A stretch of DNA of 64,000 bases, taken from positions 62,001 through 126,000 of IMG/VR virus record IMGVR_UViG_3300013120_000738; one strand, written 5' to 3'. Position 1 is the stretch's first letter, and each line of letters begins with the position of its first letter. Under the pieces are notes generated by a model that did no database searches, was not told the DNA's origin, and saw nothing but the letters and a program-made list of their open reading frames with translations. This document shows, piece by piece, positions 7,142-48,579 of the stretch. A program made the position numbers and the translations under genes.

Positions 7142-7702
7142 TTATGCACCTTTACTGGACCATTGTGATGCCACTTTACGGACTTGTTCTGCTTGTTTTC
7201 TCAATTGCGTAAAAGCGTCTTCGCATATAGTAACCTCCAAAAACCGCTCGTCTGTATTCATTTGGGCCGGTCGTATAAATTTCGTACTTTGACATTTAGC
7301 ACATGGTTTGTCATCGTCCCACGTCGAAGTATGACATTCAACACAAACGTTTGGTTGCCCAGTTATTTTGACATTGACTCTGGTTACAACTATATAGTAA
7401 TAACAATAAGTACCAGCAAGTATATTACCAGTCATTTCACAAATTTGTTTTACACCCACGCTCCTCTTCTTAGACATTACTTTCTTATAATTATCAACCA
7501 CTTTCTGACTTAATTTACTAAAGCAATGCTCACAAATATCTAACGAAAATGTTACAGAGCTTCTGAGAATTGCATCAATAGCTGGTCGTCTATTATTTTC
7601 TACAGAAGCACTATGAAAATCGAATGAATAATATATAAAATCATTCTCATATATCGTGCCACAATGATCACACGCTATGCCACTTCTATCACTTGTCTGC
7701 AT
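7142..7702 (-). CDS. Cys-rich multi-zinc-finger hypothetical protein
   Basis: CDHC, CEHC, CVEC, CAKC motifs. Confidence 0.7.
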   Translation of the reverse strand: MQTSDRSGIACDHCGTIYENDFIYYSFDFHSASVENNRRPAIDAILRSSVTFSLDICEHCFSKLSQKVVDNYKKVMSKKRSVGVKQICEMTGNILAGTYCYYYIVVTRVNVKITGQPNVCVECHTSTWDDDKPCAKCQSTKFIRPAQMNTDERFLEVTICEDAFTQLRKQAEQVRKVASQWSSKGA

Positions 7703-8279
7703 TTTTCATTCTCTTGCACGACGCACATTTACCACAACGTCGCCCATCTTTTCTAGGAAGTTCACAATACCAAACATGCTCAAATAAGCCTTCAAGCTTT
7801 AATTTAGTTACTATCTCTCCCTTATCCATCCATTCTAATGGGAAAACAAGATCACACGATTTCATATTAATAGCTAATAAATATGTAAACGCATATTTAT
7901 ACCATTCCATGTAGTGCCAAATATCATCGCCACGAATATATGCGACTGCTAACTCTTCACCATCATTTAGGTAACCAGTACCAGCAAATAACCAGATATT
8001 TGGCTGTGCGAGCCCATGCGCACCATCACCAAGCGTGATACCACGCTGTGCCGCCTTAATAGTCATCTCACAATGAGGAAATTTATACCCACGAGCACGA
8101 AACTCTTTAATCAACCGCCTCCTAGCACGTTTTTCATATGGACATGCTAGAACTTGATCATGATTGACAGCAATAGTTCTTACATCCTTGCCAGATACAA
8201 GACTGTCAAATAAAAGAAGAGTAGAGTCGCACCCACCGGACCATAAAATTAATCTAGGCTTCTCAGGAGTCCCATCCAC
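7689..8279 (-). CDS. queC: QueC-like (7-cyano-7-deazaguanine synthase family) PP-loop ATPase
   Basis: LWSGGCDST PP-loop; PL....K.EI; C-terminal WYC-x8-CGKCASC..R Zn site typical of QueC. Confidence 0.8.
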   Translation of the reverse strand: MDGTPEKPRLILWSGGCDSTLLLFDSLVSGKDVRTIAVNHDQVLACPYEKRARRRLIKEFRARGYKFPHCEMTIKAAQRGITLGDGAHGLAQPNIWLFAGTGYLNDGEELAVAYIRGDDIWHYMEWYKYAFTYLLAINMKSCDLVFPLEWMDKGEIVTKLKLEGLFEHVWYCELPRKDGRRCGKCASCKRMKNADK

Positions 8280-10968
8280 GCTGCAACAACCTTATAATTA
8301 TCTCGCCGCGAGCAAGGGTAAAAGTACCTCTCTTCTCATCGTATTCAACGATCATCTGAACGCCACTACCAGGTACCAGATTGTTCTCATCCTGAATCCC
8401 AAGCTCTCTGGAAAATATCAGAACCAAAGCATTTTGGATACCATCGCTCACGAAAACTCTCGCATATGGTTTCTTATTGCGAGAAATCGAGAATTCTAGA
8501 TCGGTGATCACAACCTCAAGCTTCGGCTCTCCACCATTCTTAGCTACCAACTTTGCATCTTCTATCGTACAATTACCTTCTATAGCATACAGGTCTAGCG
8601 GGGAATGTAAGTAATAGCCAAGATATTTCTTCTCAAATTCTAGCACTTCCTGTAGTGTAAAATCCTCTTCATATAATGCCATCACCTTTTCTGACGAATC
8701 ATCAGGTTTTGGATTCCATTTTTCTAGTTTAGGAGGAATTTTCCTACGTTTCGGGTAGAGTTTCTTATATTCATCAATCTGCCTCTGCCTCTCCTCTTGG
8801 ACAGCTTCTTCTGTCCATCCTTCTTTATTCAGCAGTTTCTGCTTTATCTCACGTTTCAATTGCGTGATATCCTTGCCCGTACAATACTTATACCTATAGT
8901 ATTCCCATGTAGCCCTAGCATTTCTATAGCCCTCGAACCGTCTGAACGCCCCAAGCTTTATAAAGGCTTCCATTACGGTCTTTTTCTTGCCCTTTTCTGC
9001 AATAAATTCATCCAGTGTTGTAAACGTACTACGACCTTCCCACAATGGTGCGGTAGTATCACCTATTCCCTTAATACCGATCAGTCCTTGATTCACCACA
9101 TCGCCGGTAACGGTAAAATCGGCCGTAAGATTTTCTACGTTAGTCGTCTCGAATTTTACACCCCTAACTTTCTTCTTGGGAGGCTGTGTACCAGCGTATG
9201 TGGTAGATGTAGGTTTCCACCCTTCTGAACGTGCTACCCCCATATACCGAACTAGTTTGTCAGGATGACATTCACTCATTACAGAAGCCCACCACTCGGG
9301 TGCGAAATGAGCCTTCAACCAAAGACAGCGATGGGCTACAAGACAATAACTAACAGCATGACTACGATTGAACGCATACCGCCCAAACGTCTTCATCTTC
9401 TCCCACCACTCCCTAGCTTCAGCTTCCCCAAGCACCTTCGAGGCACCAATCACCCATTTCTTCTCTACCGGCTTAAGCTTATCTGCCCATTTCTTAGCGA
9501 CTGCTTTTCGGGCATCTTGAGCTTCTGGTGCTGTAAAATATGCGATCTTCTGCCAAATAGCTTGTAATTGTTCCTGATAAACTATAACACCATGAGTATC
9601 ATTCAAAACCTCCAATATATCAGGATGCAATTTCTTCCGCCATCTACCCCTAGAATCATCACGATTTGCTACTGCCTCTGGGATAGAAGCCATAGGACCA
9701 GGGTGACCCATAGCATTAAACAACATCAAATCCTCGAAATTCCGCACACCATTAGCTAATATACTCTTAGCAAGATCTGTGTCGAATTGAAAAACTCCAT
9801 CTGTCTTCATCTCATTTGCAAGGCGAAGCACATGTTTATCATTGAGGTCGATATAAACCTTTTTACCTTTCCTATCAAAGAAATATCCCGCCCTGTTCTT
9901 AGTTGGGTCTATATCATCCCAACCGTCCATACTCTTACCAAATGATATCCCTCTATTCTGCTCAATAAGCTGACAACAAGTATAAATATACTTGAGTGTC
10001 TTCAGTCCTAGCAAATCCCACTTCTGATATCCGAATTTAGATAACTGAGTATTGCGACCTTCCGTCCACATACTGATCCAATATCCCTTGTTGCTACTCT
10101 TAGCCATAGGGATATTGCCATATAATGGTCTATCAGTAATAATGAGTGCACCAGCATGCATGCCCATATTTCTGATTCGACCAACCAATCTCGTAGCAAG
10201 ACTAATAACCTTCGGATAACTCCTAGCAAATTCTCGTAACTTCTCATGCTCTTTCAGCAATTGACCAATGGTTGGATTTTCTGTATCGGTAGATCCACAA
10301 TTAGGACATTTTGTACCATCATGGGATGTTCTACATTCAACCTTCTCACCAGTCTTCTCATCTATAGTATGCCCTTTACAGACTGACTTGCCGCCGTCTT
10401 TTACATCATCGACATCTTCAGGCAAATTAGTTGTTAATTCATACGCTTCTGTCTTGTCGACAAGTCCTGTCGCATCACAGACATCGATTATAGCTGATTT
10501 GAATTTGTATGTTGTCCAGGTACCAACACTGCAGACAGAACCATAACCATCACTTACATCAGTACCATATTGTGATATAGCATATTCCTTAATAGGATCA
10601 CGTGCCTCAGGAAGACAATCCACATCTACATCAGGCATGTCTGGGTCTTTGCGAAGATCTGACGGAACAAAGCCATGTTCAGTCTTAAACTTCGCTACCT
10701 CAGCGGCCTTTACTGTATTAAGTATAGGCTCTTTTCGGCCTGCTAGAGGATCGTCAGAAACAAGACCTAACAACCAAAGGAAAAGTAGATTATTTCCATC
10801 CGATTGAAATCTCTTACCTTCATTATAATATTGGTTGAATTTAGCTATAGCACCTTGCTTCTCAACCTCAGTCAATTCAAATTTCAATCGTCGGCTATAT
10901 TCCTCTGGCAAGCCTACAACTTTCGAGGTAGCCAACTCCTTCATTTCTTCCCAAGTGATATCAGCCAT
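8263..10968 (-). CDS. dnaE: DNA polymerase III alpha (DnaE), C-terminal/catalytic half
   Basis: MPDVDVD, GMHAGA, KWDLLGLKTL, GVFQF, IVYQEQ, YAFNRSHAVSY, IKGIG (HhH), EKKYLGYY.HSPLD, C-terminal OB fold; no PHP domain. Confidence 0.95.
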   Translation of the reverse strand: MADITWEEMKELATSKVVGLPEEYSRRLKFELTEVEKQGAIAKFNQYYNEGKRFQSDGNNLLFLWLLGLVSDDPLAGRKEPILNTVKAAEVAKFKTEHGFVPSDLRKDPDMPDVDVDCLPEARDPIKEYAISQYGTDVSDGYGSVCSVGTWTTYKFKSAIIDVCDATGLVDKTEAYELTTNLPEDVDDVKDGGKSVCKGHTIDEKTGEKVECRTSHDGTKCPNCGSTDTENPTIGQLLKEHEKLREFARSYPKVISLATRLVGRIRNMGMHAGALIITDRPLYGNIPMAKSSNKGYWISMWTEGRNTQLSKFGYQKWDLLGLKTLKYIYTCCQLIEQNRGISFGKSMDGWDDIDPTKNRAGYFFDRKGKKVYIDLNDKHVLRLANEMKTDGVFQFDTDLAKSILANGVRNFEDLMLFNAMGHPGPMASIPEAVANRDDSRGRWRKKLHPDILEVLNDTHGVIVYQEQLQAIWQKIAYFTAPEAQDARKAVAKKWADKLKPVEKKWVIGASKVLGEAEAREWWEKMKTFGRYAFNRSHAVSYCLVAHRCLWLKAHFAPEWWASVMSECHPDKLVRYMGVARSEGWKPTSTTYAGTQPPKKKVRGVKFETTNVENLTADFTVTGDVVNQGLIGIKGIGDTTAPLWEGRSTFTTLDEFIAEKGKKKTVMEAFIKLGAFRRFEGYRNARATWEYYRYKYCTGKDITQLKREIKQKLLNKEGWTEEAVQEERQRQIDEYKKLYPKRRKIPPKLEKWNPKPDDSSEKVMALYEEDFTLQEVLEFEKKYLGYYLHSPLDLYAIEGNCTIEDAKLVAKNGGEPKLEVVITDLEFSISRNKKPYARVFVSDGIQNALVLIFSRELGIQDENNLVPGSGVQMIVEYDEKRGTFTLARGEIIIRLLQRGWDS

Positions 10969-11324
10969 GCTTGATACTCTTCCAATCTATCCGGATGGTG
11001 ACCTTTCACATGCAAAGTCCTGCCGGGAGTACTACGTAATTCCTTACCACAGAATGGGCATTCTAATTCATTGATTGGTTCTAATTCTGGCTCTTTTTCC
11101 ACTATCTCTGGCACTGAATCCCAATCCAAGACCCACGGCTCCTTGATAAGGTATTTGCCGTCTCTGGCTTCGGCGGGCGCATAATACAAATAATAACCAT
11201 TTTCTTTGGCTTTTCGAAGCAAGCTCTGATGTTCTTTTTTACTTTTTGGTAGATGAGATGATATTATTTTGCTTGGCGCTTTCACAAGCACAAATGCAGT
11301 TCTTTTATATGTGATATCTGACAT
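10941..11324 (-). CDS. C2H2 zinc-finger protein
   Basis: CPFCGKELRSTPGRTLHVKGHH. Confidence 0.75.
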   Translation of the reverse strand: MSDITYKRTAFVLVKAPSKIISSHLPKSKKEHQSLLRKAKENGYYLYYAPAEARDGKYLIKEPWVLDWDSVPEIVEKEPELEPINELECPFCGKELRSTPGRTLHVKGHHPDRLEEYQAWLISLGKK

Positions 11325-11330
11325 ACATTC

Positions 11331-11750
11331 TTAACACGGCAGATCATCAATAGTGCCACTATCATAGTTTTCTTGATCTTTCAACGCACGTTCTGCGGCT
11401 GACTTAGCAACTAACATATAATTATTTAATTCATCTATAATTTCAATAGATATATCCTTATAATAAGTATACCACCTTAAAGCTTTAGGACGAGAACTTA
11501 TCATAGCCTCTATCTCGGGATGGCATATATAAAGACATGCCGGAAGCCCTCTAAAACCTGGCAGAACTGCCGATAAACCCAATACCACACTACGAAACAT
11601 AGCTTCTTCTTCAGATGAACTACCAAGAGTATATCCATATATTCTATGGCGGTATCTTCCATCTCCAACGACCAACAAAACACCACAACTAGATGACCGT
11701 AGAGCATCAGAATCTTCTGTTATACTATAACAATATATATCAATTTTCAT
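11331..11750 (-). CDS. Degenerate RNase H-fold protein
   Basis: IDIY...GVLL...TLG.SS.EEA...V.LGL resembles the RNase HI N-terminus, but the catalytic acidic residues are not conserved. Confidence 0.5.
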   Translation of the reverse strand: MKIDIYCYSITEDSDALRSSSCGVLLVVGDGRYRHRIYGYTLGSSSEEEAMFRSVVLGLSAVLPGFRGLPACLYICHPEIEAMISSRPKALRWYTYYKDISIEIIDELNNYMLVAKSAAERALKDQENYDSGTIDDLPC

Positions 11751-12265
11751 AGAACATTACCAGCAGAATCTCGCAAATCAGGATACGTTGCCTTAGTAAA
11801 AGTACTAAGAGCTCTCAATGTATCTGCCATCCCTTTAAGAACAGCATTTTTGGCAGCTATTTTATCTGGTAATCCCCTACTCTTTCCCAGCATTACTAAT
11901 ATCTCGTCACCTTTTTGCCGGATATTCTCCGGAAATTCCAATCCCTGATTATTAGCTTTGGCTTTTCTCTCATCAACAGATCGCTGGATGAATAAGGCCA
12001 ATGCTTCTACAATGCTGAAAGCTAAACTACTTATCTCCGTTTCCAACTTTTCCAGTTCTTCCTTGGCCTTATCGGGCGTCATCGCCAATATTAAATATAA
12101 TTTATCTATAAAATCTATCGACTTCAATCCGTATATGCATAATTGATTGTTAGGGCCTTGATACATCATCAAGTGCAATTGCATTGAATGCTTCAATTCC
12201 TTCAATGCCTGGCTATTAGAATTTATATTAATTGTAAGTTCAGGAGTATCTCTTTTCTTGGCCAT
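11747..12265 (-). CDS. Hypothetical protein
   Basis: 172-aa ORF with ATGA coupling to the downstream gene. Confidence 0.7.
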   Translation of the reverse strand: MAKKRDTPELTININSNSQALKELKHSMQLHLMMYQGPNNQLCIYGLKSIDFIDKLYLILAMTPDKAKEELEKLETEISSLAFSIVEALALFIQRSVDERKAKANNQGLEFPENIRQKGDEILVMLGKSRGLPDKIAAKNAVLKGMADTLRALSTFTKATYPDLRDSAGNVL

Positions 12266-12313
12266 AGTTGAACTCTCTTACTGGTAGTTATTGACAAGAC
12301 TTATTATAAATAC

Positions 12314-13747
12314 TCATTCAACTATCTCTTTCGGTACTGATAAATCCAGCATATATCCACCACGACTAGAAGCTAAGAATCTATCGAACGATAATCCCCA
12401 TAGCATAGGATCAAGGACATGAATACCGATCAGGAAGCACACTAACGACCCACCAGCACTTCCTCTAGGACTAAATGGCCAGCCGTGTTGTTTCCCAAAT
12501 CTTATCAAATCGCGTGTAATTAAAAAGTAACTAGCAAAACCCTTATCGATAAATCTCTTTAGTTCTATACGAGCTTGATCTATATATGTCACTTCATTAC
12601 CATCAATGAAAAACTTCCGCTTATCCTTATCAAGTCCTCGTTTCTTCAACTCTATTGCTACAATTTCTTTTAGTTTTTTATTAGCATCAGGAATTTCTGG
12701 GATTTTCGGTGCTGTATCAACGGTAAATGGTTCGCATTTATCTGCTATTTGAAGCGTGTTATCACACATCGCCTCGAATATTCTATCATCTACCCCATCA
12801 CTGTACTTGCCATTTTTAAATGTAGCCCATAGCTCTGCTCTAGACTTCATAAATTGTTCATCACTATTCACATGGAATAGATCTGGAGAATCTATAGTTG
12901 TTCCCTGTTCGACAGCCATCATTACTTTCTGTAATATAAAATCTTCTCGACGAAGATAATGGCAATCGTTGGTCAAAGTAAGTGGCAGTCCGAGATGATC
13001 TGCGACAGCAACTAACGTTCTAAACGTCTTATAATCATCCGGAATCCCAGGCATTTGTGTTTCTATATAAAAATCCTCTCCAAAAACTTTACGGAACTTT
13101 CTTACCCAAGCTAATGCAGCGTCTGTACGTTGTTTCCCAGTCCTCTCGAATACAACCTCGTCTTCTTTATTCTTCAATTCTCTATATCGCAATTCATGAC
13201 ACACTGGACCATTAAGGCACCCAGACAGAACTATGAGTCCTTCCTTGAATTCACACAATTTATCAAACCATATACGATTATATTGGGTTTTGCCCATCCC
13301 GAACAAACCCGTATCGTAGGCTTGTGTCGTTAATTTTATTAGATTATCGAATCCTGTTTGGTTCTTACATAGGACTGTCAGGTGTCTGTTTCGGCCGATA
13401 CGATATGATAAATCAGGGTTGGCGTCTCGCCATTCTTTGGATCGTATCTTAAAGCCTCTAGCTACTAAGTCCTGTCGTTGTGGTTCAAAATCATTGAAGT
13501 ATATCTCACAACCTGGAATATACTTCAACCCGTGCTTTTTGAATGCGAGATACATGTCTGGCACTGAAGCCATATGACCATGCTCTGTAGCACTCATTGC
13601 GGGATAACCACGCTTTGCACATTGCTCAGCATATTGCTCTGGCGTGGCTACACCATCTAGCGCAGAAAAGACTGTATGATTATGAAGGTATACAAATTCA
13701 CTTGGGCCTTGATAATCTTTTGGATCGTATTCGTTCGACATTTTCAA
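12314..13747 (-). CDS. dnaE: DNA polymerase III alpha (DnaE), N-terminal half: PHP domain plus start of palm
   Basis: FVYLHNHT.FS.LDG, TEHG, GCEIY, HLTVL.KN..G..NL, LSGCL.G, TNDCHY, GFASYFL, RGSAGGSLV.FLIGI...DP, FDRFL; stops just before the PDID motif. Confidence 0.95.
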   Translation of the reverse strand: MKMSNEYDPKDYQGPSEFVYLHNHTVFSALDGVATPEQYAEQCAKRGYPAMSATEHGHMASVPDMYLAFKKHGLKYIPGCEIYFNDFEPQRQDLVARGFKIRSKEWRDANPDLSYRIGRNRHLTVLCKNQTGFDNLIKLTTQAYDTGLFGMGKTQYNRIWFDKLCEFKEGLIVLSGCLNGPVCHELRYRELKNKEDEVVFERTGKQRTDAALAWVRKFRKVFGEDFYIETQMPGIPDDYKTFRTLVAVADHLGLPLTLTNDCHYLRREDFILQKVMMAVEQGTTIDSPDLFHVNSDEQFMKSRAELWATFKNGKYSDGVDDRIFEAMCDNTLQIADKCEPFTVDTAPKIPEIPDANKKLKEIVAIELKKRGLDKDKRKFFIDGNEVTYIDQARIELKRFIDKGFASYFLITRDLIRFGKQHGWPFSPRGSAGGSLVCFLIGIHVLDPMLWGLSFDRFLASSRGGYMLDLSVPKEIVE

Positions 13748-14441
13748 GCATCTCTTTGGACACGATTGGCCTATCTTCTAATACTGACCGCACAACCTGT
13801 GTAACAAGGACATTATCCAGATCTTCAACATCAGGATATGATGGTGACGCTGGTGTTTTACCAAGTCGTTGCATAAACTTTTCGAACACAAACATAGCGT
13901 TCTGTTTATGATTAGTGCATACTTGCCAGCACCTACATAAATAATTGTATAATTGGTCCGCATCTAAACGATTAAGAAGCTTCTCAAAATTTTTACCTAT
14001 ATTACGCCCAAATGTAGTTTCTATCCTTGATGGATTAGCCACCTCTATAAAATATCGCGAACCATACTGATTCGAAAGTGAAGATTCAAAAATCGCCTTC
14101 CTAGTCCTTTTTACAGTCTCAATAACGATCGCCCTTACATCATCCGCTGTAAAGCCCTTCTTAATTCCTTCATCAAATGCAATAGCCAAATCGCACAACC
14201 CTTGATATGATATCCTTTGCTGGGTTTCTGCCTGTAACCAGCTATCAATATTGGCGACAGCCATTCTAGAGCATCTATTATTATACAGCCATCTTAGATG
14301 TTGATCTAGATAATATGTCTTATCATCTATAGAGAAGACTATTATGTCACCTGATACATATGTAATAGACAAAGGCAAGCTCATGATTCTGCTAAACGAA
14401 AAAAGGACTACCAGTGTAGTAATAACATGTGCTGGGTACAC
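13698..14441 (-). CDS. Hypothetical protein
   Basis: 247-aa ORF; true start probably downstream of the annotated one because it overlaps the divergent gene. Confidence 0.65.
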   Translation of the reverse strand: MYPAHVITTLVVLFSFSRIMSLPLSITYVSGDIIVFSIDDKTYYLDQHLRWLYNNRCSRMAVANIDSWLQAETQQRISYQGLCDLAIAFDEGIKKGFTADDVRAIVIETVKRTRKAIFESSLSNQYGSRYFIEVANPSRIETTFGRNIGKNFEKLLNRLDADQLYNYLCRCWQVCTNHKQNAMFVFEKFMQRLGKTPASPSYPDVEDLDNVLVTQVVRSVLEDRPIVSKEMLENVERIRSKRLSRPK

Positions 14442-15429
14442 ACATTATCTGAAACAAGCTATAGATAGCCTAAAACGACAAATCATTGGGCCAGACGAAA
14501 TAATAGTAGTATTTGATAACACTTCATTACCGCCACAACAAGACGGTATAAAATATCTACGGGTAAATTATGGAAGCCCATTTCTAAGCAGAAAAAGAGG
14601 TTTTGAAGAGGCACGATCTGAAGTTATTATTTTTCTAGACGCAGATGACTATCTTAGCGATGACTACATAGCCCAGGGATTATCTATAAAAACTGATAAT
14701 AATATAATTTATTCAGATATGCAATTATTCGGGGATTTGGATAAGTTAGTTGAATACCCTTCATTTATTCCATCTAAACGAATTTCACAAGTCAACTTTC
14801 TACATATTGGATGCTTAGTAAGTGCTGACACTATTCGACAAAGTAAAGCATTTTCTAGCCTTCCGCCCCCAACATGTCATGAAGATTGGGTGTTTTGGCG
14901 CAGGCTCGTCAGATATGGATACCAATACCAAAAACAAAGTGGGATCTACTACGCTAGACAACATGATAATAATAGATCTTGCGATATCGAATCCGGCCCA
15001 TATTATGAAGCAAAGGGGATAGCAGCTGACATCATCGCATTTATAAAGATTGATGGTGGACAACACGCAAGAGCTGTAATAGACCAATGGCCGGATAAGC
15101 AAAGACAATTGGTATGTAATGAGTATCAGGATTTTGTATGCGAGAGGATGATAATATATAATGGTAACCCAATAGAAGCAGTGAGAAGCCTAACAGCTGA
15201 TTATGTCTACTTCTATGATTCAAACTCCACTCACATAGATATCCAACAATTGCTGAGAGAATTCAATCATGACGTAGCCGCCGTTCATTGTCAAAAACAT
15301 GAATTTTGGCATGCTACTATGGCAGTGATAGATATTATTAAAGAAAGGCCAACTGGGGGTCCATTATGCTCAAAGAAGAACGAACAGATACTACTGCTAA
15401 AGACCACTTCTGTACCATCATCACTTTAA
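14344..15429 (+). CDS. Glycosyltransferase family 2
   Basis: SVVIT...YL.QAIDSL..Q....EIIVV.D, FLDADD, EDW.FW. Confidence 0.9.
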   Translation: MSPDTYVIDKGKLMILLNEKRTTSVVITCAGYTHYLKQAIDSLKRQIIGPDEIIVVFDNTSLPPQQDGIKYLRVNYGSPFLSRKRGFEEARSEVIIFLDADDYLSDDYIAQGLSIKTDNNIIYSDMQLFGDLDKLVEYPSFIPSKRISQVNFLHIGCLVSADTIRQSKAFSSLPPPTCHEDWVFWRRLVRYGYQYQKQSGIYYARQHDNNRSCDIESGPYYEAKGIAADIIAFIKIDGGQHARAVIDQWPDKQRQLVCNEYQDFVCERMIIYNGNPIEAVRSLTADYVYFYDSNSTHIDIQQLLREFNHDVAAVHCQKHEFWHATMAVIDIIKERPTGGPLCSKKNEQILLLKTTSVPSSL

Positions 15430-16316
15430 ATCATCTAGATAAAGCTCTTGCATTATTAAAATCACTGCAAAAGCATGGACAAGTAATATTACATATTCTG
15501 ATTATAAACAGCCATCAAACCACACTAAAAAGACTTGGTGACGTCAAAGAAATTTCCGACGTACGACTATATTCCCCAGAAATGCTCGAGGAAAGTACTG
15601 TCGGATTGTTAGCAAGACTAATATTTGGCAAGTATATGGGGCAAGACGATGAAATCCGGTGGGCACTCAAACCACTATTTGTTCAATTCTTAGTTGAACA
15701 CCATATACCAATATGCTATTGTGATTGTGATTTATTCTTCTACGACAGCTATAAATTCCTCGTAGAAAAATTGCGTCTAAAAGGCAGCACAAGAGGTAAA
15801 TCAATAGTAATCACTCCGCACTTCAGAGAAATAAGACGCATTAAGAATAATGAATATAGATTCAACTATAAACATGGTCTATACAATGCTGGATTTATAG
15901 GATTCGGCGATGAATGCCAAGAGATGTTGGAATGGTGGTCTGAAATGTGCGCCACAGAATGCACTAGAGAAGAGAGCGCGTGGACATATGTAGATCAGAA
16001 ATATCTAGATTTAGTACCAATCTATTTCGAAAATGTTGAAGTCCTAAAACATTATGGTTGCAATGTCGCCGGTTGGAATACATATTACTTGAAAAGGACC
16101 GTTGGTGAAGACGGAAAAGTCCTAGTAAACGGTCAAGAAATCGTCTTTATTCATTTCTCCCCAGCAACACTAACTGGCATCGAAGAAGGCCACGACCAAC
16201 TCCTATTTGATCATTACACAGAATACCAGAAGACATTACAAGAACTGAGAAAGATGCTACTAAGAGCACATCTCAGAAATTGTATTTCTGGCACAATCGA
16301 AGGTCAAGTCATATGA
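15366..16316 (+). CDS. GT-A fold glycosyltransferase
   Basis: FCTI, WALKP, YCDCD (DxD), G.YNAGF.GF, WW...C, DQKYLD, NVA.WN, FIHFS. Confidence 0.85.
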   Translation: MLKEERTDTTAKDHFCTIITLNHLDKALALLKSLQKHGQVILHILIINSHQTTLKRLGDVKEISDVRLYSPEMLEESTVGLLARLIFGKYMGQDDEIRWALKPLFVQFLVEHHIPICYCDCDLFFYDSYKFLVEKLRLKGSTRGKSIVITPHFREIRRIKNNEYRFNYKHGLYNAGFIGFGDECQEMLEWWSEMCATECTREESAWTYVDQKYLDLVPIYFENVEVLKHYGCNVAGWNTYYLKRTVGEDGKVLVNGQEIVFIHFSPATLTGIEEGHDQLLFDHYTEYQKTLQELRKMLLRAHLRNCISGTIEGQVI

Positions 16317-17383
16317 CAGAAAAACCAGACATCAACGTCTGTTATATGGGAACTACCCGATTCTTCTATAACCATATGACACAATTGATGCTGAGACTCA
16401 GTAAATGGTTAAAGAGCCATCAGCATATCGAATTAACTGATATACATAGAGCCGATATGATATGGGTAGCCACCAACGAATTTAGCCCAAAAATGCTTGA
16501 TATAGGGCTACCAATAATCTTAGAGGATAAACATCAATCACCAGAAATCCTGCAAGAAGTCAGAGAAGTTCTACCACATCCCAATATATTTTGTTTACTC
16601 AAACAAGCCGTCCCTCTCGATAGAGCAGTCTATAATAGAAGACTAACCTCATCAATCATCCATATGGATATTATTGCAAGAGCAATGGATCTAAAAGATG
16701 AGAAATATCAACAATATCCGGAAATGACACCTAAAATGTTCGATAAGATCCGTGTAGGATGGAACTATATCGGATGGGGCGATTTTGTGCCACAAACAAG
16801 ATACGAAGCACACAATCACCCAGAAGTAAGCCAAGTATACGCACATAAAATTAATAACCAAAGAAAAATCGATGTCAATTTTGTTTGTAATGTAGACTGT
16901 TTTGACCCACCGGCCCCAATATTACAAGCACATAGGATGGCAGCACTCGAAGCACTACAAGGACTGGAAGGGGTAAATGCTAAGATAATAAGAGCAAAAC
17001 ACCATAGCGAAGAATATACTAGAATTGATTGGACAGAGTATTATGATATATTATTTAATTCTAAAATAACAATCTCCCCATGGGGATGGGAACCAGTAAC
17101 TGTACGCGACATAGAAGCAGCCCTAGCCGGTAGTCTAATAATCAAACCAGATACTAGCTTCTTAAAAACATGGCCTGAATTCCCATACGTTTCCTGTAAG
17201 CCAGACTTCTCCGATCTAGTACCAACCATTCATAATATTCTCAAGAAATGGAAAGAGTATACAGAAACTCGTAGAAAAGCAAAATATGATACTGTAGCAG
17301 CGATAGACAATATAGGATATCGTATCGCGGAGCTAGTACGAGAATGTTATTACCAAGCAAACCAAGTATCACCTTTACCATAA
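16280..17383 (+). CDS. Glycosyltransferase (GT-B/Glyco_trans_1_2-like C-terminus)
   Basis: Y...L..SKI.ISPWG......RDIEA..AG.LIIKPD; likely start ATG at 16313. Confidence 0.75.
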   Translation: MYFWHNRRSSHMTEKPDINVCYMGTTRFFYNHMTQLMLRLSKWLKSHQHIELTDIHRADMIWVATNEFSPKMLDIGLPIILEDKHQSPEILQEVREVLPHPNIFCLLKQAVPLDRAVYNRRLTSSIIHMDIIARAMDLKDEKYQQYPEMTPKMFDKIRVGWNYIGWGDFVPQTRYEAHNHPEVSQVYAHKINNQRKIDVNFVCNVDCFDPPAPILQAHRMAALEALQGLEGVNAKIIRAKHHSEEYTRIDWTEYYDILFNSKITISPWGWEPVTVRDIEAALAGSLIIKPDTSFLKTWPEFPYVSCKPDFSDLVPTIHNILKKWKEYTETRRKAKYDTVAAIDNIGYRIAELVRECYYQANQVSPLP

Positions 17384-19949: not shown

Positions 19950-21047
19950 TCAATCTGCGATTCCCTTTTCGGCGGCCTCTAAACATCCTGTAGCAACACA
20001 GAATAAAGGCCTATCCGACTTGGTCACAGTTCCAATATCAAATGGTGGGCCTATCTCGTCAAACTTCTTGGCGACACGCTTAGTAAAGCCCTCAGGGGAA
20101 CTACTGCCGCCAGCCATATAAACATTTATAGCACCCTCTAGTCGTGCTTCCGACTCGTGCTCCTCAAAGCCCTTGATAATACCGTCAATCACGGTGCTGA
20201 TAAGGACATCATAGTGTAGTACGACATCCATACCTACACGATCATCTGGTTCACTACCAGGTGTGAGATTTACATCCTGTTTTCTCTTTGATACTGTGGT
20301 AGGTGTCTCTTTTGCTACTTTCCTACGGGTCTTCAAGGCTTGGGGGTTATAACCATGACGCATTGCTACTTGTTCATCTATCCAGTCGCCTGCGCCTACC
20401 CAGCAGAAAGAATATATCTCAAGGCCATATTTCACGTAGCTGACAGTAACAGTACCAGCACCCCATGAGATCCCAATACCTGTACCATCTTCGCTCATAT
20501 CGATTACGATAGCATGGGATTCTTTTATCGCGTTATGTGTTATCTTAGCGTCGGTTTCATATCCTTCAATAATAATGTTGACTACACGTTCATGATAATC
20601 AACATTTAATTCCTTATTGAGTGATGGAGCGGTGGTGCAGTAACAAACCTGTACCTCGTCACCAAATTTTCCAATCTCCTTTTCAGCCATCTCCATTAGG
20701 CCTTGGACAATCGTTCCTAGGATTGTGATGGCTTCTTCGTCAGCAGATATTCCACCTTCTGCCATTGGTCTACGTAGTGTGTCGTTCTTGGCGTATGCAA
20801 ATTCTTCTGCATCTTCTCCAAGTACGATGGCTTCTCCTGTTTCGGGCATTTCTACCCATTTTGCAGGTCTTTTTGTACCGTCTGCCCTCATTTTGCTAGG
20901 ATCGTCTAGCATGTTCCGAATGAATGGCGTTGCTCTTTCAAATGGCCAATACCCATTGATTTCTGAGATGTAGTTGACCTTTTCATTATCCGTGCGGTAA
21001 GCAAGGACTACTGTTCTTGTGCCAACATCGATACCCAAGTGTCTCAT
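19950..21047 (-). CDS. Actin-fold ATPase (MamK/ParM/MreB superfamily)
   Basis: GIDVGT (phosphate 1), RRPM..G, GISWGAGT (phosphate 2), GAGDWID, MAGGSS (adenosine); GGAG SD before ATG 21047 (ORF track extends in frame to 21479). Confidence 0.85.
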   Translation of the reverse strand: MRHLGIDVGTRTVVLAYRTDNEKVNYISEINGYWPFERATPFIRNMLDDPSKMRADGTKRPAKWVEMPETGEAIVLGEDAEEFAYAKNDTLRRPMAEGGISADEEAITILGTIVQGLMEMAEKEIGKFGDEVQVCYCTTAPSLNKELNVDYHERVVNIIIEGYETDAKITHNAIKESHAIVIDMSEDGTGIGISWGAGTVTVSYVKYGLEIYSFCWVGAGDWIDEQVAMRHGYNPQALKTRRKVAKETPTTVSKRKQDVNLTPGSEPDDRVGMDVVLHYDVLISTVIDGIIKGFEEHESEARLEGAINVYMAGGSSSPEGFTKRVAKKFDEIGPPFDIGTVTKSDRPLFCVATGCLEAAEKGIAD

Positions 21048-21174
21048 GAGTACTCTCCTACCTTTATGGACGTCACCCAACTTATATACACTATAATCGG
21101 ATGAAGGTTTCGGTTCTAGAATTGAAATACGTTTGGTTTGCCCCTCAGACCGAGGGACGTCTTTTGCGCGGTGG

Positions 21175-21519
21175 TCACCCTTTTCGGAGTGAACAGGCTT
21201 TGATTTTGCGGGCGGTGGGATTACTTTGGGAACCGGAGTCGGTATCTTTTTGTTTGAGGTCTTTTCGTTTGATTTTGTAGTAGGTTTTTGGTCCGATTCG
21301 CGGGAAGGTGGCACGTTGATCGGTTTCGGTCGTTTCGGAAGTGACGTCACCCTTTGATCCACCACCCTCGGTTTCACTTCCATCTCTGCTAGAAATTGAT
21401 AAATCATCGATAGGGGAAGCCTCACTACCTCGCGAAGTCTTTTCAGCACTTCCGATCGTTGGGCTTTCTTCGGATCCACAGAACAGTTGCCTTAATAAAT
21501 TAATTACTTTCTTCATCAT
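21175..21519 (-). CDS. Low-complexity hypothetical protein (frame uncertain)
   Basis: 114-aa ORF overlapping in another frame the long open 5' extension of the actin-like ORF. Confidence 0.4.
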   Translation of the reverse strand: MMKKVINLLRQLFCGSEESPTIGSAEKTSRGSEASPIDDLSISSRDGSETEGGGSKGDVTSETTETDQRATFPRIGPKTYYKIKRKDLKQKDTDSGSQSNPTARKIKACSLRKG

Positions 21520-21790
21520 CGAGATCTACTTTCAATCCAAACCCACCCTTAGCTCTCGGCGGCTTCTTAATGTGTGGAGCTACAATTTCCGGGGGAAGAT
21601 CTCCAACAATCCTCTCCTGGATACTTTTATCTTCATCATGTTGTGCAACACTTAGACCAACATGATTTGAGCTCTTAGACATATTTTCAAAAGCAATAAC
21701 AAGTCTTCGGAACAAACAAAGAAATATTATGCTATAAATACCTATCCCTAGCCCCACACACGCATATACAAACCATATTAACCATATCAT
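21500..21790 (-). CDS. Small membrane protein
   Basis: Hydrophobic N-terminal 27 aa; ATGA coupling. Confidence 0.7.
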   Translation of the reverse strand: MIWLIWFVYACVGLGIGIYSIIFLCLFRRLVIAFENMSKSSNHVGLSVAQHDEDKSIQERIVGDLPPEIVAPHIKKPPRAKGGFGLKVDLDDEESN

Positions 21791-23181
21791 ATATGAGCTA
21801 CTCGTAATAGCGGGATATTAGCACTCTGGGCCATCTTGCCAAGCTGTATTAGGCCGCCCTCATATAGTGCTAATCTTTTTTGGGTGGCTTCCGTATCTGG
21901 CCAAATCTGGCCATCACGGTAATAACTTATCTTCGATGTGTGACTTCTACCACTAATTATTCTATTATCACAGCCAAACAATGTTATAGATCTAGGGTTC
22001 AAGAATAAAGCAAAATTCACGGCAGTCAAAACCGAAGACTCGAAATTACAAAAAGGAGGATTAACAGTCTCGCCAATCATACCAAATTCATATTGATCAA
22101 ATTGGATAGAATCAGGAATAAGCTCAGCAGCGGCTACATATTGACCAGCAACACCCTGAAACAACGCAAAAGCCACCACAAATCGCTTAGCAGGATATTT
22201 ATCACGCAATTCTAATACAACTTGAGCAGAACTAGTAACCAAATAATCACACCGATACAGTTCACCAACGTAATCTATACCAATAATTATATCATGTCTT
22301 TCAATATCCGATGGTTTAATATAATCTAATGATGGGCCATTTCCAATCACCGCAACAGTCTTACCAGTCGCAACATTCTTTAAAGAAAACACGTTTAATA
22401 ACTCTGGTTGTATATTCTGTAGCCACCAATTTATATCTCTTTCGGTCTTAAAGGTATCCAGCCTCCCAGGTTTTATATTATTAGGGTTTATACTCCTAGA
22501 TTGATAAAAATATGTCGAATACTTGGGCATCCACCTCTCAACCAACCTAGTCATATTAACTGCACTTTTACCACTCTCTTGCTCGACAAAAGCCGCTATC
22601 TTACTATCATCAACAACTAAAACTTGACCACCAAATAACCAATTCTTAATACTGATATCTATATCTTCACCAGGACCCGCTTTCATCCCATTGTCAAAAC
22701 CACCTATTTCATCAAATCTTGCCTTTTCTATAGTGATACAGTATGATGACGCAACAGGTGATTTATTACCACCAATGTACCGACGATTGTGGATGGACAT
22801 ATCCCAATGTATACCAAATCTACGCCATCTCAATCGATCGATTGCCCATAAATTAAGATCTAAAGAATGAATGACAGGACTTACAATAGTCTTCTCATCA
22901 AGATTCTTTAGTAAGGGCTCGAGCCAGTCTTTACCGAATTTGGTAGTTTGTCTTAAGAATATAAGGACTTTAGATTTTGCTTGTTTTGCGGCTGCATTCC
23001 AGGCCTTTGCGCGGCCGACATTCTCTGTCTTAAGTATAGTAACATCGTCTAGATCTACTCCTCCCCCGTCATCACATACTATGAGCTCCTCAATGAGCTC
23101 TGGCGGGGTTTTATCCCGGAGGTCATTTATAGTTTGTGAGAGATTAGTCTTATCTGTACAGTAGAATATGAAGCTAGGCAT
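21787..23181 (-). CDS. GT2 domain fused to Maf/DUF115 (MptE-like) domain
   Basis: ELIVCDDG, G.A.A.N, IGGFD..M...PGED; then VAVIGNGPSL...SITLFGCD. Confidence 0.8.
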   Translation of the reverse strand: MPSFIFYCTDKTNLSQTINDLRDKTPPELIEELIVCDDGGGVDLDDVTILKTENVGRAKAWNAAAKQAKSKVLIFLRQTTKFGKDWLEPLLKNLDEKTIVSPVIHSLDLNLWAIDRLRWRRFGIHWDMSIHNRRYIGGNKSPVASSYCITIEKARFDEIGGFDNGMKAGPGEDIDISIKNWLFGGQVLVVDDSKIAAFVEQESGKSAVNMTRLVERWMPKYSTYFYQSRSINPNNIKPGRLDTFKTERDINWWLQNIQPELLNVFSLKNVATGKTVAVIGNGPSLDYIKPSDIERHDIIIGIDYVGELYRCDYLVTSSAQVVLELRDKYPAKRFVVAFALFQGVAGQYVAAAELIPDSIQFDQYEFGMIGETVNPPFCNFESSVLTAVNFALFLNPRSITLFGCDNRIISGRSHTSKISYYRDGQIWPDTEATQKRLALYEGGLIQLGKMAQSANIPLLRVAHI

Positions 23182-34788: not shown

Positions 34789-34839
34789 GTTGATCGCCAA
34801 CTATTTTGATCACCGTATTACGAGTCTGGGGAATCTTAT

Positions 34840-43022: not shown

Positions 43023-43319
43023 TTGCTAGCATGTATTGGAAAAAAGGGTATTCCTCCTTTACAGGGTGGTCATATGAAAACTAAACCATACAACACCGAC
43101 ATTCCGCCAGAGTTAAAACAACTTATTGCTGACCACCAAGAAGCAATAGTAATACTTGTCGACAAGAGTGACAAAGAAGACTATGATACAAAAGTGTCAG
43201 CATTCGTGAAAATGTTAGATAAAGATAGCAAACTTGCCAACTTACTTGCTGACATATTAGAGAATCTACATGCACAGGAACGTCGTTGCATCCAGAGTGA
43301 AACCGTTGGTAGTCCGTAA
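43023..43319 (+). CDS. Hypothetical protein (start probably 43074)
   Basis: Helical ORF coupled to the downstream gene. Confidence 0.6.
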   Translation: MLACIGKKGIPPLQGGHMKTKPYNTDIPPELKQLIADHQEAIVILVDKSDKEDYDTKVSAFVKMLDKDSKLANLLADILENLHAQERRCIQSETVGSP

Positions 43320-44217: not shown

Positions 44218-44231
44218 CGTATTATGGAGGC

Positions 44232-47328: not shown

Positions 47329-47412
47329 GATGTGTTACTAGTTATATCTTGACTACCATAGCTATTTCCGTATTTAATCAATAACATCCCACCTTACATA
47401 AAGGCAAAAACA

Positions 47413-48579
47413 ATGCAATCTGGAACGTTCAATGTAGTTACCGATGGACAATGGGGCTCCTGTGGAAAAGGTTTGATATCAACAGCAATCGCCGACAGAT
47501 ATCGACCAAGCGTCATATCAACGACCAATATGGCAAATGCGGGGCATACCGCAGTCGATAGTGATGGAGCCACATTCATAGCTAAGGCCCTACCAGCCCC
47601 AGCAATTCTTGGAAAATGGCGAACTGATTATCTTCCATATATCGTAATAGGACCAACAGCCGCATTTCATGCCAAGCAAATGGCAAAGGAAGTCGCCGAA
47701 ACCGAATGTGCTCCAAGGCTCGTGATACATCCAAGAGCGGGCATAATCACAGAGCAACACCAAGAAATCGAGAATCAACTCAAAGGTGGGACAAAACACG
47801 TCGCTAGTACCATGCAAGGTTGTGGGGCATTCCTTGCCGACAAGATTATGAGGCGGCCAGATTTGAAGCTTGCAGGCGATACAGAATTCACCCAATACTC
47901 AGGGTATACTCTCGAAAAAGCACTCGCGGCATGTTTACGTGGTACAAAATGGCAAAGCCTCTGCGTAGACTTATCGATACCACGCATATTACAAATGTTC
48001 ATGGAGGTGGGCAATACTATCCTACATGAAGGATCTCAAGGATTCAGCCTGGATATTAACCACGGCTCACATTATCCTCAGTGCACCAGCAGAAGCACGA
48101 CGGCTATGCAAAACATGGCCGACATGGGTATTACTCATCATCACATGGGTAGAGTAATATTGGTCATCAGGCCAGCGCCTATTCGCGTCGGTAATGTAGT
48201 TGAAGGTGGTAAAACTGTAGGATATTCTGGCGATTGTTATCCTGACCATACAGAAACAACTTGGGAAGCTATTGGTGAGGCTTGTGGAGCACCACAAGAA
48301 ACGTTTAAAGGTGAATTAACTACAGTCACAAAAAGATTACGACGGGTTTTCACGTTCTCCGATATCCAATTTAAGGAAGCTGTTGCGATTAATGGAGCGA
48401 CCGAGATTGCTCTTAATTTCGCAAACTATATTGATTGGAAGTGTTATGGAACTAATAACCCAAACAATCTTCCTCCCAAAGTCACCGATTTCATAAAGAA
48501 ATTAGAAGATCTAGGTGGCGTCAAAGTCACTATAGTTGGCACTGGTCCAAGAAACGACCATGTTTGTTTCTTAGACTAA
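47413..48579 (+). CDS. purZ: PurZ, N6-succinyl-2-amino-dAMP synthetase (adenylosuccinate synthetase-like, 2-aminoadenine pathway)
   Basis: DGQWGSCGKGL (Ser at the PurA Asp13 position), NMANAGHT, EGSQGFSL, YPQCTSR, R..PIRVG, SGDCYPD, ELTTVTKR.RRVFTFS..Q, LNFANY (replaces PurA TKLD). Confidence 0.9.
   Translation: MQSGTFNVVTDGQWGSCGKGLISTAIADRYRPSVISTTNMANAGHTAVDSDGATFIAKALPAPAILGKWRTDYLPYIVIGPTAAFHAKQMAKEVAETECAPRLVIHPRAGIITEQHQEIENQLKGGTKHVASTMQGCGAFLADKIMRRPDLKLAGDTEFTQYSGYTLEKALAACLRGTKWQSLCVDLSIPRILQMFMEVGNTILHEGSQGFSLDINHGSHYPQCTSRSTTAMQNMADMGITHHHMGRVILVIRPAPIRVGNVVEGGKTVGYSGDCYPDHTETTWEAIGEACGAPQETFKGELTTVTKRLRRVFTFSDIQFKEAVAINGATEIALNFANYIDWKCYGTNNPNNLPPKVTDFIKKLEDLGGVKVTIVGTGPRNDHVCFLD

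What the first reader, a model, noticed from the sequence alone, without database searches (positions are those of the whole stretch)
8263..13747. Split DnaE with a duplicated, degenerate palm segment and no intein
Seen: the N-half ends at FDRFLASSR, just before the catalytic PDxD, and keeps the RGS motif and the triphosphate-binding Arg positions. The C-half starts about 1.35 kb and three genes downstream. It begins not at the break point but with an eroded second copy of the same palm segment (EYSRRLKFELTEVEKQG vs YIDQARIELKRFIDKG; NNLLFLWLLGLVSDDPL vs GSLVCFLIGIHVLDPM), which has lost RGS/RFL. Inference: either a heterodimeric polymerase whose dNTP pocket is assembled in trans, or a catalytic subunit with a rebuilt pocket plus a separate PHP editor. 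Given purZ, it is a candidate dZTP-selective family-C polymerase.
Basis: partly seen in the sequence, partly recalled or inferred. Interest (0 to 1): 0.82.

Follow-up and report, generated by a model that had tools for sequence, protein, structure and literature searches.

The report
Intein-less two-gene phage DnaE polymerase
A large uncultured phage encodes its replicative DnaE-type DNA polymerase as two separate, conserved genes cut through the active site, each keeping its own copy of one palm segment; this layout is old and widespread in big phages and is not specific to phages that make the modified base Z.

Summary
On the minus strand, a 477-aa N-half (12314-13747) carries the PHP domain and the first palm segment, with RGS and DRFL intact. 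It ends at Pfam DNA_pol3_alpha position 98. A 901-aa C-half (8263-10968) resumes at position 99, the PDVDVD strand, after a 108-aa extension. Three genes (1345 bp) lie between, and no intein or intron.

Within the window, the extension's similarity to the N-half palm segment is not significant (BLASTP E 0.48). Family-level evidence shows true homology:
- profile-profile E 4e-12
- Pfam E 4e-5 on distant members
- structure matches to DnaE only

The copy is diverged, not decaying: five of its residues are invariant.

The layout recurs on all the roughly 37 related viral contigs fetched that retain upstream sequence, and in very distant relatives, so it is not a misassembly. The intact palm copy is the most conserved part of the N-half. 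Real inteins target its RG|S motif in relatives. This favours an obligate two-subunit polymerase with a nucleotide pocket built in trans. That mechanism is inferred, not shown.

The purZ link is by lineage only. No purZ was found on any of four long contigs of a sister clade carrying the same split, or on seven of nine long contigs carrying distant C-half-type genes.

The parts
12314..13747 (-). DnaE N-half, 477 aa: PHP exonuclease domain plus first palm segment
   Evidence: Pfam finds PHP at aa 21-231 (E 1e-33) and DNA_pol3_alpha profile positions 16-98 at aa 381-462. It aligns to M. tuberculosis DnaE1 residues 2-411. There are 572 homologues of about 470-480 aa.
12956..13684 (-). PHP metal-ligand motifs (HNH, LDG, TEHG, GCEIY, RHLTV, SGC, NDCHY)
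   Evidence: All align with the matching motifs of M. tuberculosis DnaE1; positions come. That these are the nine metal ligands of an active PHP exonuclease is from my knowledge of the Mtb and Taq enzymes.
12362..12607 (-). Intact palm-N segment of the N-half (aa 381-462), with PRGS (12458-12469) and DRFL (12374-12385)
   Evidence: It is the most conserved part of the N-half: mean top-residue frequency 0.86, and 50 of 82 columns are at least 90% conserved. Inteins sit exactly at RG|S in relatives L047 and L059.
12317..12361 (-). N-half C-terminal tail (GGYMLDLSVPKEIVE); the family consensus is SRGGYMLNVxMP
   Evidence: The first part of the tail is conserved across the family. Whether it is a relic of the catalytic strand could not be shown.
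11747..12265 (-). Intervening gene 1 (172 aa), function unknown
   Evidence: No Pfam, PHROG or NCBIfam hit, and the Atlas was uninformative. It keeps this position in many relatives. A likely counterpart in the 41-46% clade was recognised only by position and a shared C-terminal motif.
11331..11750 (-). Intervening gene 2 (139 aa), RNase H-like fold
   Evidence: ESM Atlas gives TM 0.82 to RNase_H/RVT_3 proteins and a feature score of 0.93. It keeps this position in many closer relatives. A likely counterpart in the 41-46% clade was recognised by position and terminal motifs.
10941..11324 (-). Intervening gene 3 (127 aa), with a CPFCG...HVKGHH zinc-finger-like motif
   Evidence: The motif is read from the translation. 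The gene is conserved in closer relatives at 23-55% identity. No family hit.
8263..10968 (-). DnaE C-half, 901 aa: diverged palm-N copy, catalytic palm, thumb, fingers, HhH, C-terminal region
   Evidence: Pfam finds DNA_pol3_alpha positions 99-260 at aa 109-321, the finger domain at 325-510 and HHH_6 at 603-683. Residue 110 aligns with Taq 460. More than 120 clusters share the whole architecture.
10645..10968 (-). N-terminal extension of the C-half (aa 1-108): second, diverged copy of the palm-N segment, lacking RGS and RFL
   Evidence: Sequence evidence is. Its own invariant residues are F30, E31, E34, K37 and Q38.
10618..10635 (-). Catalytic strand PDVDVD (aa 112-117)
   Evidence: D113, D115 and D117 are invariant in 91 sequences. 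The strand aligns to Taq 'MPDIDTD'.
10003..10026 (-). QKWDLLGL (aa 315-322): Lys and third catalytic Asp motif
   Evidence: K316 is at least 90% conserved and the family consensus reads KWDILGLKTL. It aligns with Taq 'LKMDFLGL'. Its equivalence to E. coli K553/D555 is from my knowledge.
10294..10380 (-). Zinc-ribbon-like insertion in the thumb (C197, C212, H216, C221, C224)
   Evidence: The four Cys are invariant and H216 is at least 90% conserved. The region is confidently modelled. It is absent from the PDB DnaE alignments.
7142..7702 (-). Conserved Cys-rich 186-aa gene downstream of the C-half, part of the same syntenic block
   Evidence: Present downstream of the C-half in nearly all relatives at 27-54% identity, usually directly after it and on the same strand. 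Function unknown.
47413..48579 (+). purZ-like gene (context for the Z hypothesis)
   Evidence: phrog_1211 E 4e-59 and PF00709 E 6e-34. The NCBIfam PurZ model is the best hit, E 4e-66 at 223 bits, but this is below its 300-bit cut-off. The P-loop reads GQWGSCGKG.

Best explanation
This is an ancient, fixed fission of a phage DnaE-type (family C) replicative polymerase into two separately translated subunits. No intein or intron is involved. The two subunits most likely work as an obligate heterodimer. The cut runs through the Pol-beta-like nucleotidyltransferase core. The N-half keeps an apparently active PHP proofreading domain. It also keeps the intact first palm segment, with the GS loop (PRGS) and the Arg residues of DRFLxxSR that hold the incoming dNTP triphosphate in canonical DnaE. 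The C-half keeps the three catalytic Asp, the Lys, the thumb, the fingers and the DNA-binding parts. The two genes overlap by about 80-100 residues of homologous sequence: the C-half starts with its own copy of the palm segment. The most economical origin is a partial duplication, or two truncated gene copies, followed by complementary loss. My inference is that the N-half copy supplies the GS/Arg side of the pocket in trans. The diverged C-half copy would then survive as a structural cover or docking module that holds the subunits together. Shown: the gene structure, the homology of the overlap, conservation, and synteny. Inferred: heterodimer formation, which copy sits at the active site, and the order of evolutionary events.
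For: The break is clean in three profile libraries and in PDB alignments. The catalytic residues are complementary: PRGS and DRFL occur only in the N-half, while PDVDVD, KWD, YQEQ and NRSHA occur only in the C-half. The overlap is homologous. Both halves are strongly conserved: 572 N-half homologues and more than 120 C-half clusters. The intact palm-N segment is the most conserved part of the N-half, at 0.86 against 0.78 for PHP. In relatives, inteins or split inteins sit exactly at RG|S in the N-half and at NR|SH in the C-half. From my knowledge, inteins usually sit at functionally critical motifs. In all the roughly 37 family loci fetched that retain upstream sequence, the N-half lies 1-3 kb upstream of the C-half. 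The same arrangement holds in the P0258 clade and in relatives whose N-half is only 26-31% identical. AF2 of the C-half alone models the extension and thumb confidently but leaves the palm sheet below pLDDT 50. That fits a palm core that needs a partner.
Against: No model of the complex and no biochemistry were available, so the heterodimer and the trans pocket are untested. Low pLDDT in the palm core could also reflect a shallow alignment. The extension is collinear with the palm segment and, in distant members, has nearly canonical spacing to PDxD. It could therefore occupy the canonical place itself, leaving no room for the N-half copy. In some distant loci no N-half lies within 6 kb. The idea that the N-half tail is a relic of the catalytic strand got no support.
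Confidence: 0.55

Rival explanations
1. The C-half is a self-sufficient polymerase whose own diverged palm segment occupies the canonical position, with a rebuilt triphosphate pocket. Candidate replacements include R27, K37, Q38, N57 and R78. The N-half is then a separate PHP proofreading subunit, and its palm segment is only a handle for docking.
For: The extension is collinear with canonical palm-N. In distant members the spacing from DP to PD is about 17 residues against about 20 in canonical DnaE. The extension has its own invariant polar residues. PHP ligands are intact in the N-half.
Against: It does not explain why RGS, DRFL and SR, the canonical dNTP-binding residues, are the most conserved part of the N-half, or why inteins target RG|S there. 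From my knowledge, the GS loop is near-universal in Pol-beta-like nucleotidyltransferases, and the C-half has none. The palm core of the C-half alone models poorly.
Confidence: 0.25
2. The split or rebuilt pocket is an adaptation for selecting dZTP over dATP in a Z-genome phage, that is, a family-C counterpart of DpoZ.
For: The window carries a purZ-like gene. All 11 contigs of at least 130 kb in the clade at least 49% identical to the window carry both purZ and the split polymerase. A review states that all known Z phages except S-2L have a polA-type dpoZ (PMC8775771), so a DnaE-type polymerase in a purZ phage would be a new pairing.
Against: No purZ was found on any of 4 long contigs (234-388 kb) of the 41-46% clade, which has the same split. 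None was found on 7 of 9 long contigs (165-527 kb) with distant C-half-type genes either. The split is therefore far older and wider than purZ. The same review says that in S-2L, dZTP use rests on DatZ and MazZ rather than on the polymerase. No datZ or mazZ was seen among the ten ORFs tested around purZ. No residue-level argument for base selection exists.
Confidence: 0.08
3. The two halves are joined after transcription or translation, by an intron, trans-splicing or a split intein, to give one canonical polypeptide.
For: Real inteins and split inteins occur elsewhere in this very gene family. Split-intein DnaE genes are known in cyanobacteria and in metagenomic 'fractured genes' (PMC2677866).
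Against: There are no HINT or intein Pfam hits at the break. No Cys, Ser or Thr nucleophile or His-Asn junction is present. The 108-aa extension is helical and homologous to the palm, not to a HINT fold. The window has no Rfam intron hit. The gap holds three conserved protein genes. Joining the halves would duplicate the palm segment.
Confidence: 0.02
4. The split is an assembly artefact, or one half is a decaying pseudogene.
For: The window is a single metagenomic contig.
Against: The same arrangement appears on dozens of independent contigs from different samples. Both halves are intact ORFs at 41-77% identity across the family, with active-site residues conserved.
Confidence: 0.01

Closest known systems
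Canonical bacterial and phage DnaE (Pol III alpha; e.g. Taq 2HPI/3E0D, M. tuberculosis DnaE1 5LEW/7PU7, E. coli 2HNH)
   Same: The same domains occur in the same order: PHP, palm, thumb, fingers, HhH. The motifs are also the same: RGS, ERFL-type Arg, PDxDxD, KxD, YQEQ and N(K/R)SH. PHP ligands are intact, as in the Taq and Mtb proofreading type.
   Different: It is encoded as two polypeptides, broken between the GS/Arg and DxD elements of the active site. About 80-100 residues of the palm are present twice. The thumb carries a zinc-ribbon-like insertion. Three other genes lie between the halves.
Cyanobacterial split DnaE with a split intein (Ssp/Npu DnaE), and metagenomic 'fractured genes' (Dassa et al. 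2009, PMC2677866)
   Same: DnaE is encoded in pieces. In relatives of this phage, true fractured sites with split inteins and homing endonucleases also occur, at RG|S and at NR|SH.
   Different: At this break there is no intein on either side, so the halves cannot be ligated. The break point differs (one search states that the known sites differ from each other). The exteins overlap instead of abutting.
Intein-less split polymerases: two-subunit family B polymerase of Methanothermobacter, and split gp43 (43A/43B) of some T4-related phages (recalled from memory, not checked here)
   Same: A replicative polymerase is divided into two separately translated subunits that are thought to reassemble non-covalently.
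   Different: Those belong to a different polymerase family (B) and a different fold. As far as I recall, they have no duplicated overlap segment and their cut does not separate the triphosphate-binding loop from the catalytic Asp.
DpoZ (PolA-type polymerase of purZ phages)
   Same: It co-occurs with purZ in one phage lineage.
   Different: It belongs to an unrelated family (A against C). The split architecture here is not confined to purZ carriers.

Membership tests
Family C DNA polymerase, DnaE type | N-terminal PHP domain | tested here: met
   PF02811 E 1e-33 at aa 21-231. The metal-ligand motifs align with Mtb DnaE1.
Family C DNA polymerase, DnaE type | Pol-beta-like palm with a GS loop and three catalytic Asp | tested here: met
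   All elements are present, but on two proteins. PRGS and DRFL are in the N-half. PDVDVD and KWD are in the C-half.
Family C DNA polymerase, DnaE type | Fingers domain and HhH DNA-binding module | tested here: met
   PF17657 E 6e-28 and PF14579 E 2e-6.
Family C DNA polymerase, DnaE type | Catalytic core on a single polypeptide | tested here: not met
   There are two ORFs 1345 bp apart. The arrangement recurs in every related locus fetched that retains upstream sequence.
Family C DNA polymerase, DnaE type | DNA polymerase activity, clamp and tau binding | not testable with these tools
   This needs biochemistry. The C-terminal OB/tau region aligned only weakly (domain 4).
Split-intein (trans-spliced) DnaE / fractured gene | HINT intein halves flanking the break, with Cys/Ser at position 1, a terminal His-Asn and a +1 nucleophile | tested here: not met
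   No intein Pfam hits. The tail is 15 aa without a nucleophile. The extension is helical and homologous to the palm. By contrast, L047 and L059 show true inteins at RG|S.
Split-intein (trans-spliced) DnaE / fractured gene | Homing endonuclease gene between the halves | tested here: not met
   The three intervening ORFs have no endonuclease hits. One has an RNase H fold.
PurZ (context gene 47413-48579) | Scores best with the PurZ model rather than PurA, and above its curated cut-off | tested here: inconclusive
   NF038379 PurZ is the best hit (223 bits, E 4e-66) and beats the PurA models, but it is below the 300-bit cut-off. phrog_1211 gives E 4e-59.
DpoZ-type Z-selective polymerase | Family A (PolA) fold | tested here: not met
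   Both halves are family C only.
DpoZ-type Z-selective polymerase | Preference for dZTP over dATP | not testable with these tools
   This needs a primer-extension assay.

The most novel reading that the evidence does not exclude
A Pol-beta-type polymerase active site is assembled from two polypeptides. Each carries one copy of a duplicated strand-helix module: one copy keeps the triphosphate-binding GS/Arg residues, and the other sits next to the catalytic Asp. The two homologous modules might pair, possibly by reciprocal swap, to lock the subunits together. This would be a previously undescribed way of building a replicative polymerase. It could make catalysis depend on subunit assembly, for example as a checkpoint coupling proofreading to synthesis, or as a target or escape route in phage-host conflict. 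In the purZ clade, the trans-supplied pocket could additionally have been tuned for dZTP.
Probability: 0.15. Interest if true: 0.85.

Novelty: new variant of a known kind. Interest (0 to 1): 0.62.

Why it matters
Family C polymerases are described as single-chain catalytic subunits, and the known natural splits are repaired by inteins. Here a large, deeply branching group of big uncultured phages keeps the enzyme permanently in two pieces. Representatives clustered at 50% identity give about 118 C-half-type proteins among the best 148. The cut falls between the nucleotide-binding loop and the catalytic aspartates, and a duplicated segment overlaps the break. If the halves reassemble, this is a natural experiment in how much of a Pol-beta-type active site can be supplied in trans. 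It is also a worked example of gene fission by duplication and complementary loss. It offers a ready-made split polymerase for protein engineering. For annotation, the N-half and C-half should be called as subunits of one enzyme rather than as fragments or pseudogenes. It also shows that some purZ phages carry a DnaE-type replicase, a type not mentioned for purZ phages in the 2022 review read here. I did not check whether this phage also has a PolA or PrimPol.

Tried and rejected
- **Direct similarity within the window.** Pairwise BLASTP of the extension against the N-half palm gave E 0.48. Pfam on the window extension found nothing. The extension HMM against PDB sequences returned only chance hits. 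A family-only hhalign gave E 0.1. The window alone cannot prove the duplication; a wider set of relatives was needed.
- **DNA-level repeat between the two segments.** None was found. The duplication is old.
- **N-half tail (SRGGYMLNVxMP) as a relic of the catalytic strand.** hhalign does not align it to PDxDxD. I keep this only as speculation.
- **Intron or ribozyme.** No Rfam hits in the window.
- **Cultured relatives.** There is no DNA match in INPHARED. Protein hits in cultured phages are full-length DnaE. The closest INPHARED record for a distant member, LR756511.1, has a fused 1179-aa gene. No cultured phage with this split was identified.
- **Foldseek with the 345-aa model.** It hits DnaE but gives no coordinates and low TM, so it cannot place the extension.
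- **Function of the 172-aa gene.** Nothing was found.
- **Literature.** Searches for purZ with DnaE, split DnaE in phage, PHP domain on two genes, and purZ with jumbo found no description of this architecture.
Full report
**What is in the sequence**

Seven minus-strand ORFs run head to tail between 7142 and 14441, apart from short start/stop overlaps:
- a 247-aa ORF of unknown function;
- a 477-aa ORF (12314-13747);
- three small ORFs of 172, 139 and 127 aa;
- a 901-aa ORF (8263-10968);
- a QueC-like ORF and a Cys-rich 186-aa ORF.

The 477-aa protein has a PHP domain at aa 21-231. It also has Pfam DNA_pol3_alpha profile positions 16-98 at aa 381-462. The 901-aa protein has profile positions 99-260 at aa 109-321, followed by the finger domain and an HhH module.

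PHROG 405 shows the same clean hand-over (42-439, then 440-1043). So does NCBIfam PRK05673 (4-398, then 401-1054).

Alignments to solved structures place the end of the N-half at M. tuberculosis DnaE1 residue ~411 ('FERFLNPERT'). They place C-half residue 110 at Taq residue 460 ('SMPDIDTD'). The gap is 1345 bp.

**Which residues sit on which half**

| Half | Elements |
|---|---|
| N-half | PHP motifs aligned with those of Mtb DnaE1; PRGS (aa 427-430); DRFL (455-458); SR (461-462) |
| C-half | PDVDVD (112-117); KWD (316-318); YQEQ (464-467); NRSHA (534-538) |

From established knowledge of E. coli and Taq Pol III alpha, the GS loop and the Arg of ERF hold the triphosphate of the incoming nucleotide, and the three Asp bind the metals. 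The two genes therefore carry complementary halves of one active site.

**Is the C-half extension a second copy of the palm segment?**

From the window alone this cannot be shown:
- BLASTP gives E 0.48 over 20 residues.
- Pfam finds nothing in aa 1-108.
- A profile of close relatives finds no DnaE among PDB sequences.

A search of 1.84 billion representative proteins changed the picture. Most of the best 150 hits are PHP-less proteins that start 75-135 residues before PDxD. Their N-termini look much more canonical, for example '...EYKERLVFEFKEIDKQGANDYWLDL...NGLVLPWLLGITDIDPIE...PDFPDIDLDF'.

The evidence for homology is:
- The window extension matches one of these, P0266, at E 4e-12.
- The P0266 extension alone, cut before the catalytic strand, hits Pfam DNA_pol3_alpha positions 5-90 at E 4e-5. 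Six of ten such extensions hit the same region.
- A 238-sequence extension profile aligns to the palm segment of ten unsplit DnaE proteins with probability 97.6 and E 4e-12. It aligns to the N-half palm segment with probability 93.5 and E 2e-7.
- In an unsplit relative, L065, the DNA that matches N-half aa 388-462 lies inside the stretch that matches the C-half from aa 16 on.

Structure agrees:
- The extension folds confidently as five helices (pLDDT 90.5).
- Its only Foldseek hits in the PDB are five DnaE chains. The E-values are weak; the best has TM 0.51.
- Its ESM Atlas structural neighbours are all DNA_pol3_alpha proteins (TM 0.62-0.71). These include proteins that carry PHP and DNA_pol3_alpha but no finger domain.

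The aligned positions show RGS replaced by S/T-N-x-N and no RFL.

One correction is needed: the copy is not decaying. Five residues (F30, E31, E34, K37, Q38) are invariant, and 18 more are at least 90% conserved in 91 sequences. Overall, the extension is about as conserved as the thumb.

**Not an artefact, not spliced**

- *Recurrence.* I fetched 37 viral contigs whose C-half is 41-100% identical to the window's. In every one that retains upstream sequence, an N-half lies 1-3 kb upstream of the C-half. The same holds in a more distant clade found through P0258. It also holds in loci whose N-half is only 26-31% identical yet ends at the same point.
- *Intervening genes.* They recur in place in closer relatives: the 172-aa gene in most, the RNase-H-fold gene in many, and the 127-aa gene in most. 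Likely counterparts of the first two occur in the 41-46% clade.
- *No intron or intein here.* There is no Rfam hit and no intein domain at the break.
- *True inteins elsewhere in the family.* L047 has a contiguous mini-intein, and L059 a split intein, exactly at RG|S of the N-half. Other fractures occur at C-half aa ~429, ~466 and 535/536, the last inside NR|SH. These sites vary between relatives. The break studied here is constant and intein-free.

**How it most likely works**

Three observations favour an obligate heterodimer in which the N-half supplies the GS/Arg side of the pocket:
- The intact palm segment is the most conserved part of the N-half. Its mean top-residue frequency is 0.86 against 0.78 for PHP, and 50 of 82 columns are at least 90% conserved.
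- Inteins, which typically lodge in functionally critical motifs, target its RG|S.
- AF2 of the C-half alone models the extension, thumb and zinc ribbon confidently but leaves the palm sheet (aa 110-150 and 269-321) below pLDDT 50.

The diverged copy in the C-half would then serve as a structural cover or docking surface. This is inference.

The main rival is that the extension occupies the canonical site and the pocket was rebuilt, with the N-half acting as a detachable PHP proofreader. The extension is collinear with the palm and has near-canonical spacing to PDxD in distant members, so this cannot be excluded.

The overlap suggests an origin by partial duplication, or from two truncated copies, followed by complementary loss. 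I could not show that the conserved N-half tail (SRGGYMLNVxMP) is a relic of the catalytic strand.

**The purZ link**

The window carries a purZ-like gene at 47413-48579. It matches phrog_1211 (E 4e-59) and PF00709. The NCBIfam PurZ model is its best hit but scores below the cut-off.

| Group | Contigs considered | With purZ |
|---|---|---|
| C-half at least 49% identical to the window | at least 130 kb | 11 of 11 |
| Same clade | at least 100 kb | 12 of 14 |
| Sister clade, 41-46% identical, same split | 234-388 kb | 0 of 4 |
| Distant C-half-type genes | 165-527 kb | 2 of 9 |

Many of the distant loci have a separate N-half upstream.

There are two caveats. purZ detection relied on two conserved peptide patterns, and contigs may be incomplete. 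With those caveats, the split is much older and wider than purZ.

A review notes that in S-2L, dZTP use rests on DatZ and MazZ rather than on the polymerase (PMC8775771). What remains new is that some purZ phages have a DnaE-type replicase. [quoted passage not shown]

**Comparison with known systems, and novelty**

The protein pair is a family C polymerase by every domain and motif test except one: it is not a single chain. It is not a split-intein DnaE (describes that class). It works like the intein-less split family B polymerases that I recall from Methanothermobacter and some T4-related phages. It differs from them in fold, in cutting through the nucleotidyltransferase core, and in the duplicated overlap.

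Six full-text searches found no description of it. No INPHARED phage shows it. PHROG families of N-half-like size (phrog_7513, 461 positions) and of PHP-less size (phrog_11165, 782 positions) hint that a few sequenced phages may have similar pieces.

I rate it a new variant of a known kind. It is of real interest to polymerase structural biology and to the study of gene fission. The dZTP-selectivity idea is unsupported.

Noticed in passing
window 10294-10380 (C-half aa 197-224): A zinc-ribbon-like insertion (C197, C212, H216, C221, C224) sits in the thumb. The four Cys are invariant across 91 family members and H216 is at least 90% conserved. The insertion is absent from solved DnaE structures, and its role is unknown.
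   Followed up: partly
L047:2857-4755; L059:2337-5134; L026/L027 (C-half aa 535/536); L039-L041, L044, L048, L050, L051, L053, L057, L058: Relatives carry extra, variable fractures of both halves, with inserts of about 0.5 to 6 kb. These include a mini-intein and a split intein exactly at RG|S of the N-half, and a break inside NR|SH of the fingers. The family is a hot spot for inteins and homing elements.
   Followed up: partly
window 11331-11750 (-): A 139-aa protein with an RNase H fold (Atlas TM 0.82) lies between the polymerase halves in many closer relatives, with a likely counterpart in the 41-46% clade. It could act in primer removal or be an accessory subunit. Its catalytic residues were not checked.
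   Followed up: partly
window 7689-8279 (-): A QueC-like gene (phrog_1550 E 1.5e-28; Pfam QueC matches the C-terminal part only) lies directly downstream of the C-half. It is absent at this position in every relative fetched. It hints at a 7-deazaguanine-type modification in addition to Z.
   Followed up: no
window 7142-7702 (-): A Cys-rich 186-aa protein with several CxxC pairs is present downstream of the C-half in nearly all relatives (27-54% identity), usually directly after it. No family hit.
   Followed up: no
window 19950-21479 (-): A 509-aa protein matches Pfam Volactin, named after an actin homologue of Haloferax volcanii (E 2e-39). The same gene, with a LAGLIDADG insertion, lies upstream of the split polymerase in the distant P0258 clade (L105, L106).
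   Followed up: no
window 43270-49894: Around purZ lie a methyltransferase, a nucleoside 2-deoxyribosyltransferase-like gene, a radical SAM/SPASM gene, an endonuclease VII/HNH-like gene directly after purZ, and a weak AP_endonuc_2 TIM-barrel hit. No HD-type datZ or MazG-type mazZ was seen among the ten ORFs tested.
   Followed up: partly
window 51062-60448 (+): A single giant ORF of 3128 aa. It was not analysed.
   Followed up: no
window 32941-36657 (+): An XPD/DEAD_2-type helicase (615 aa) is followed by an SMC/RecF-like ATPase (605 aa). They probably belong to the replication and recombination module.
   Followed up: no
window 14344-17383 (+) and 21787-23181 (-): Several glycosyltransferase-like genes flank the replication block. 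Glycos_transf_2 was found at 21787-23181. The ORFs at 14344-17383 look similar by eye but were not tested.
   Followed up: no
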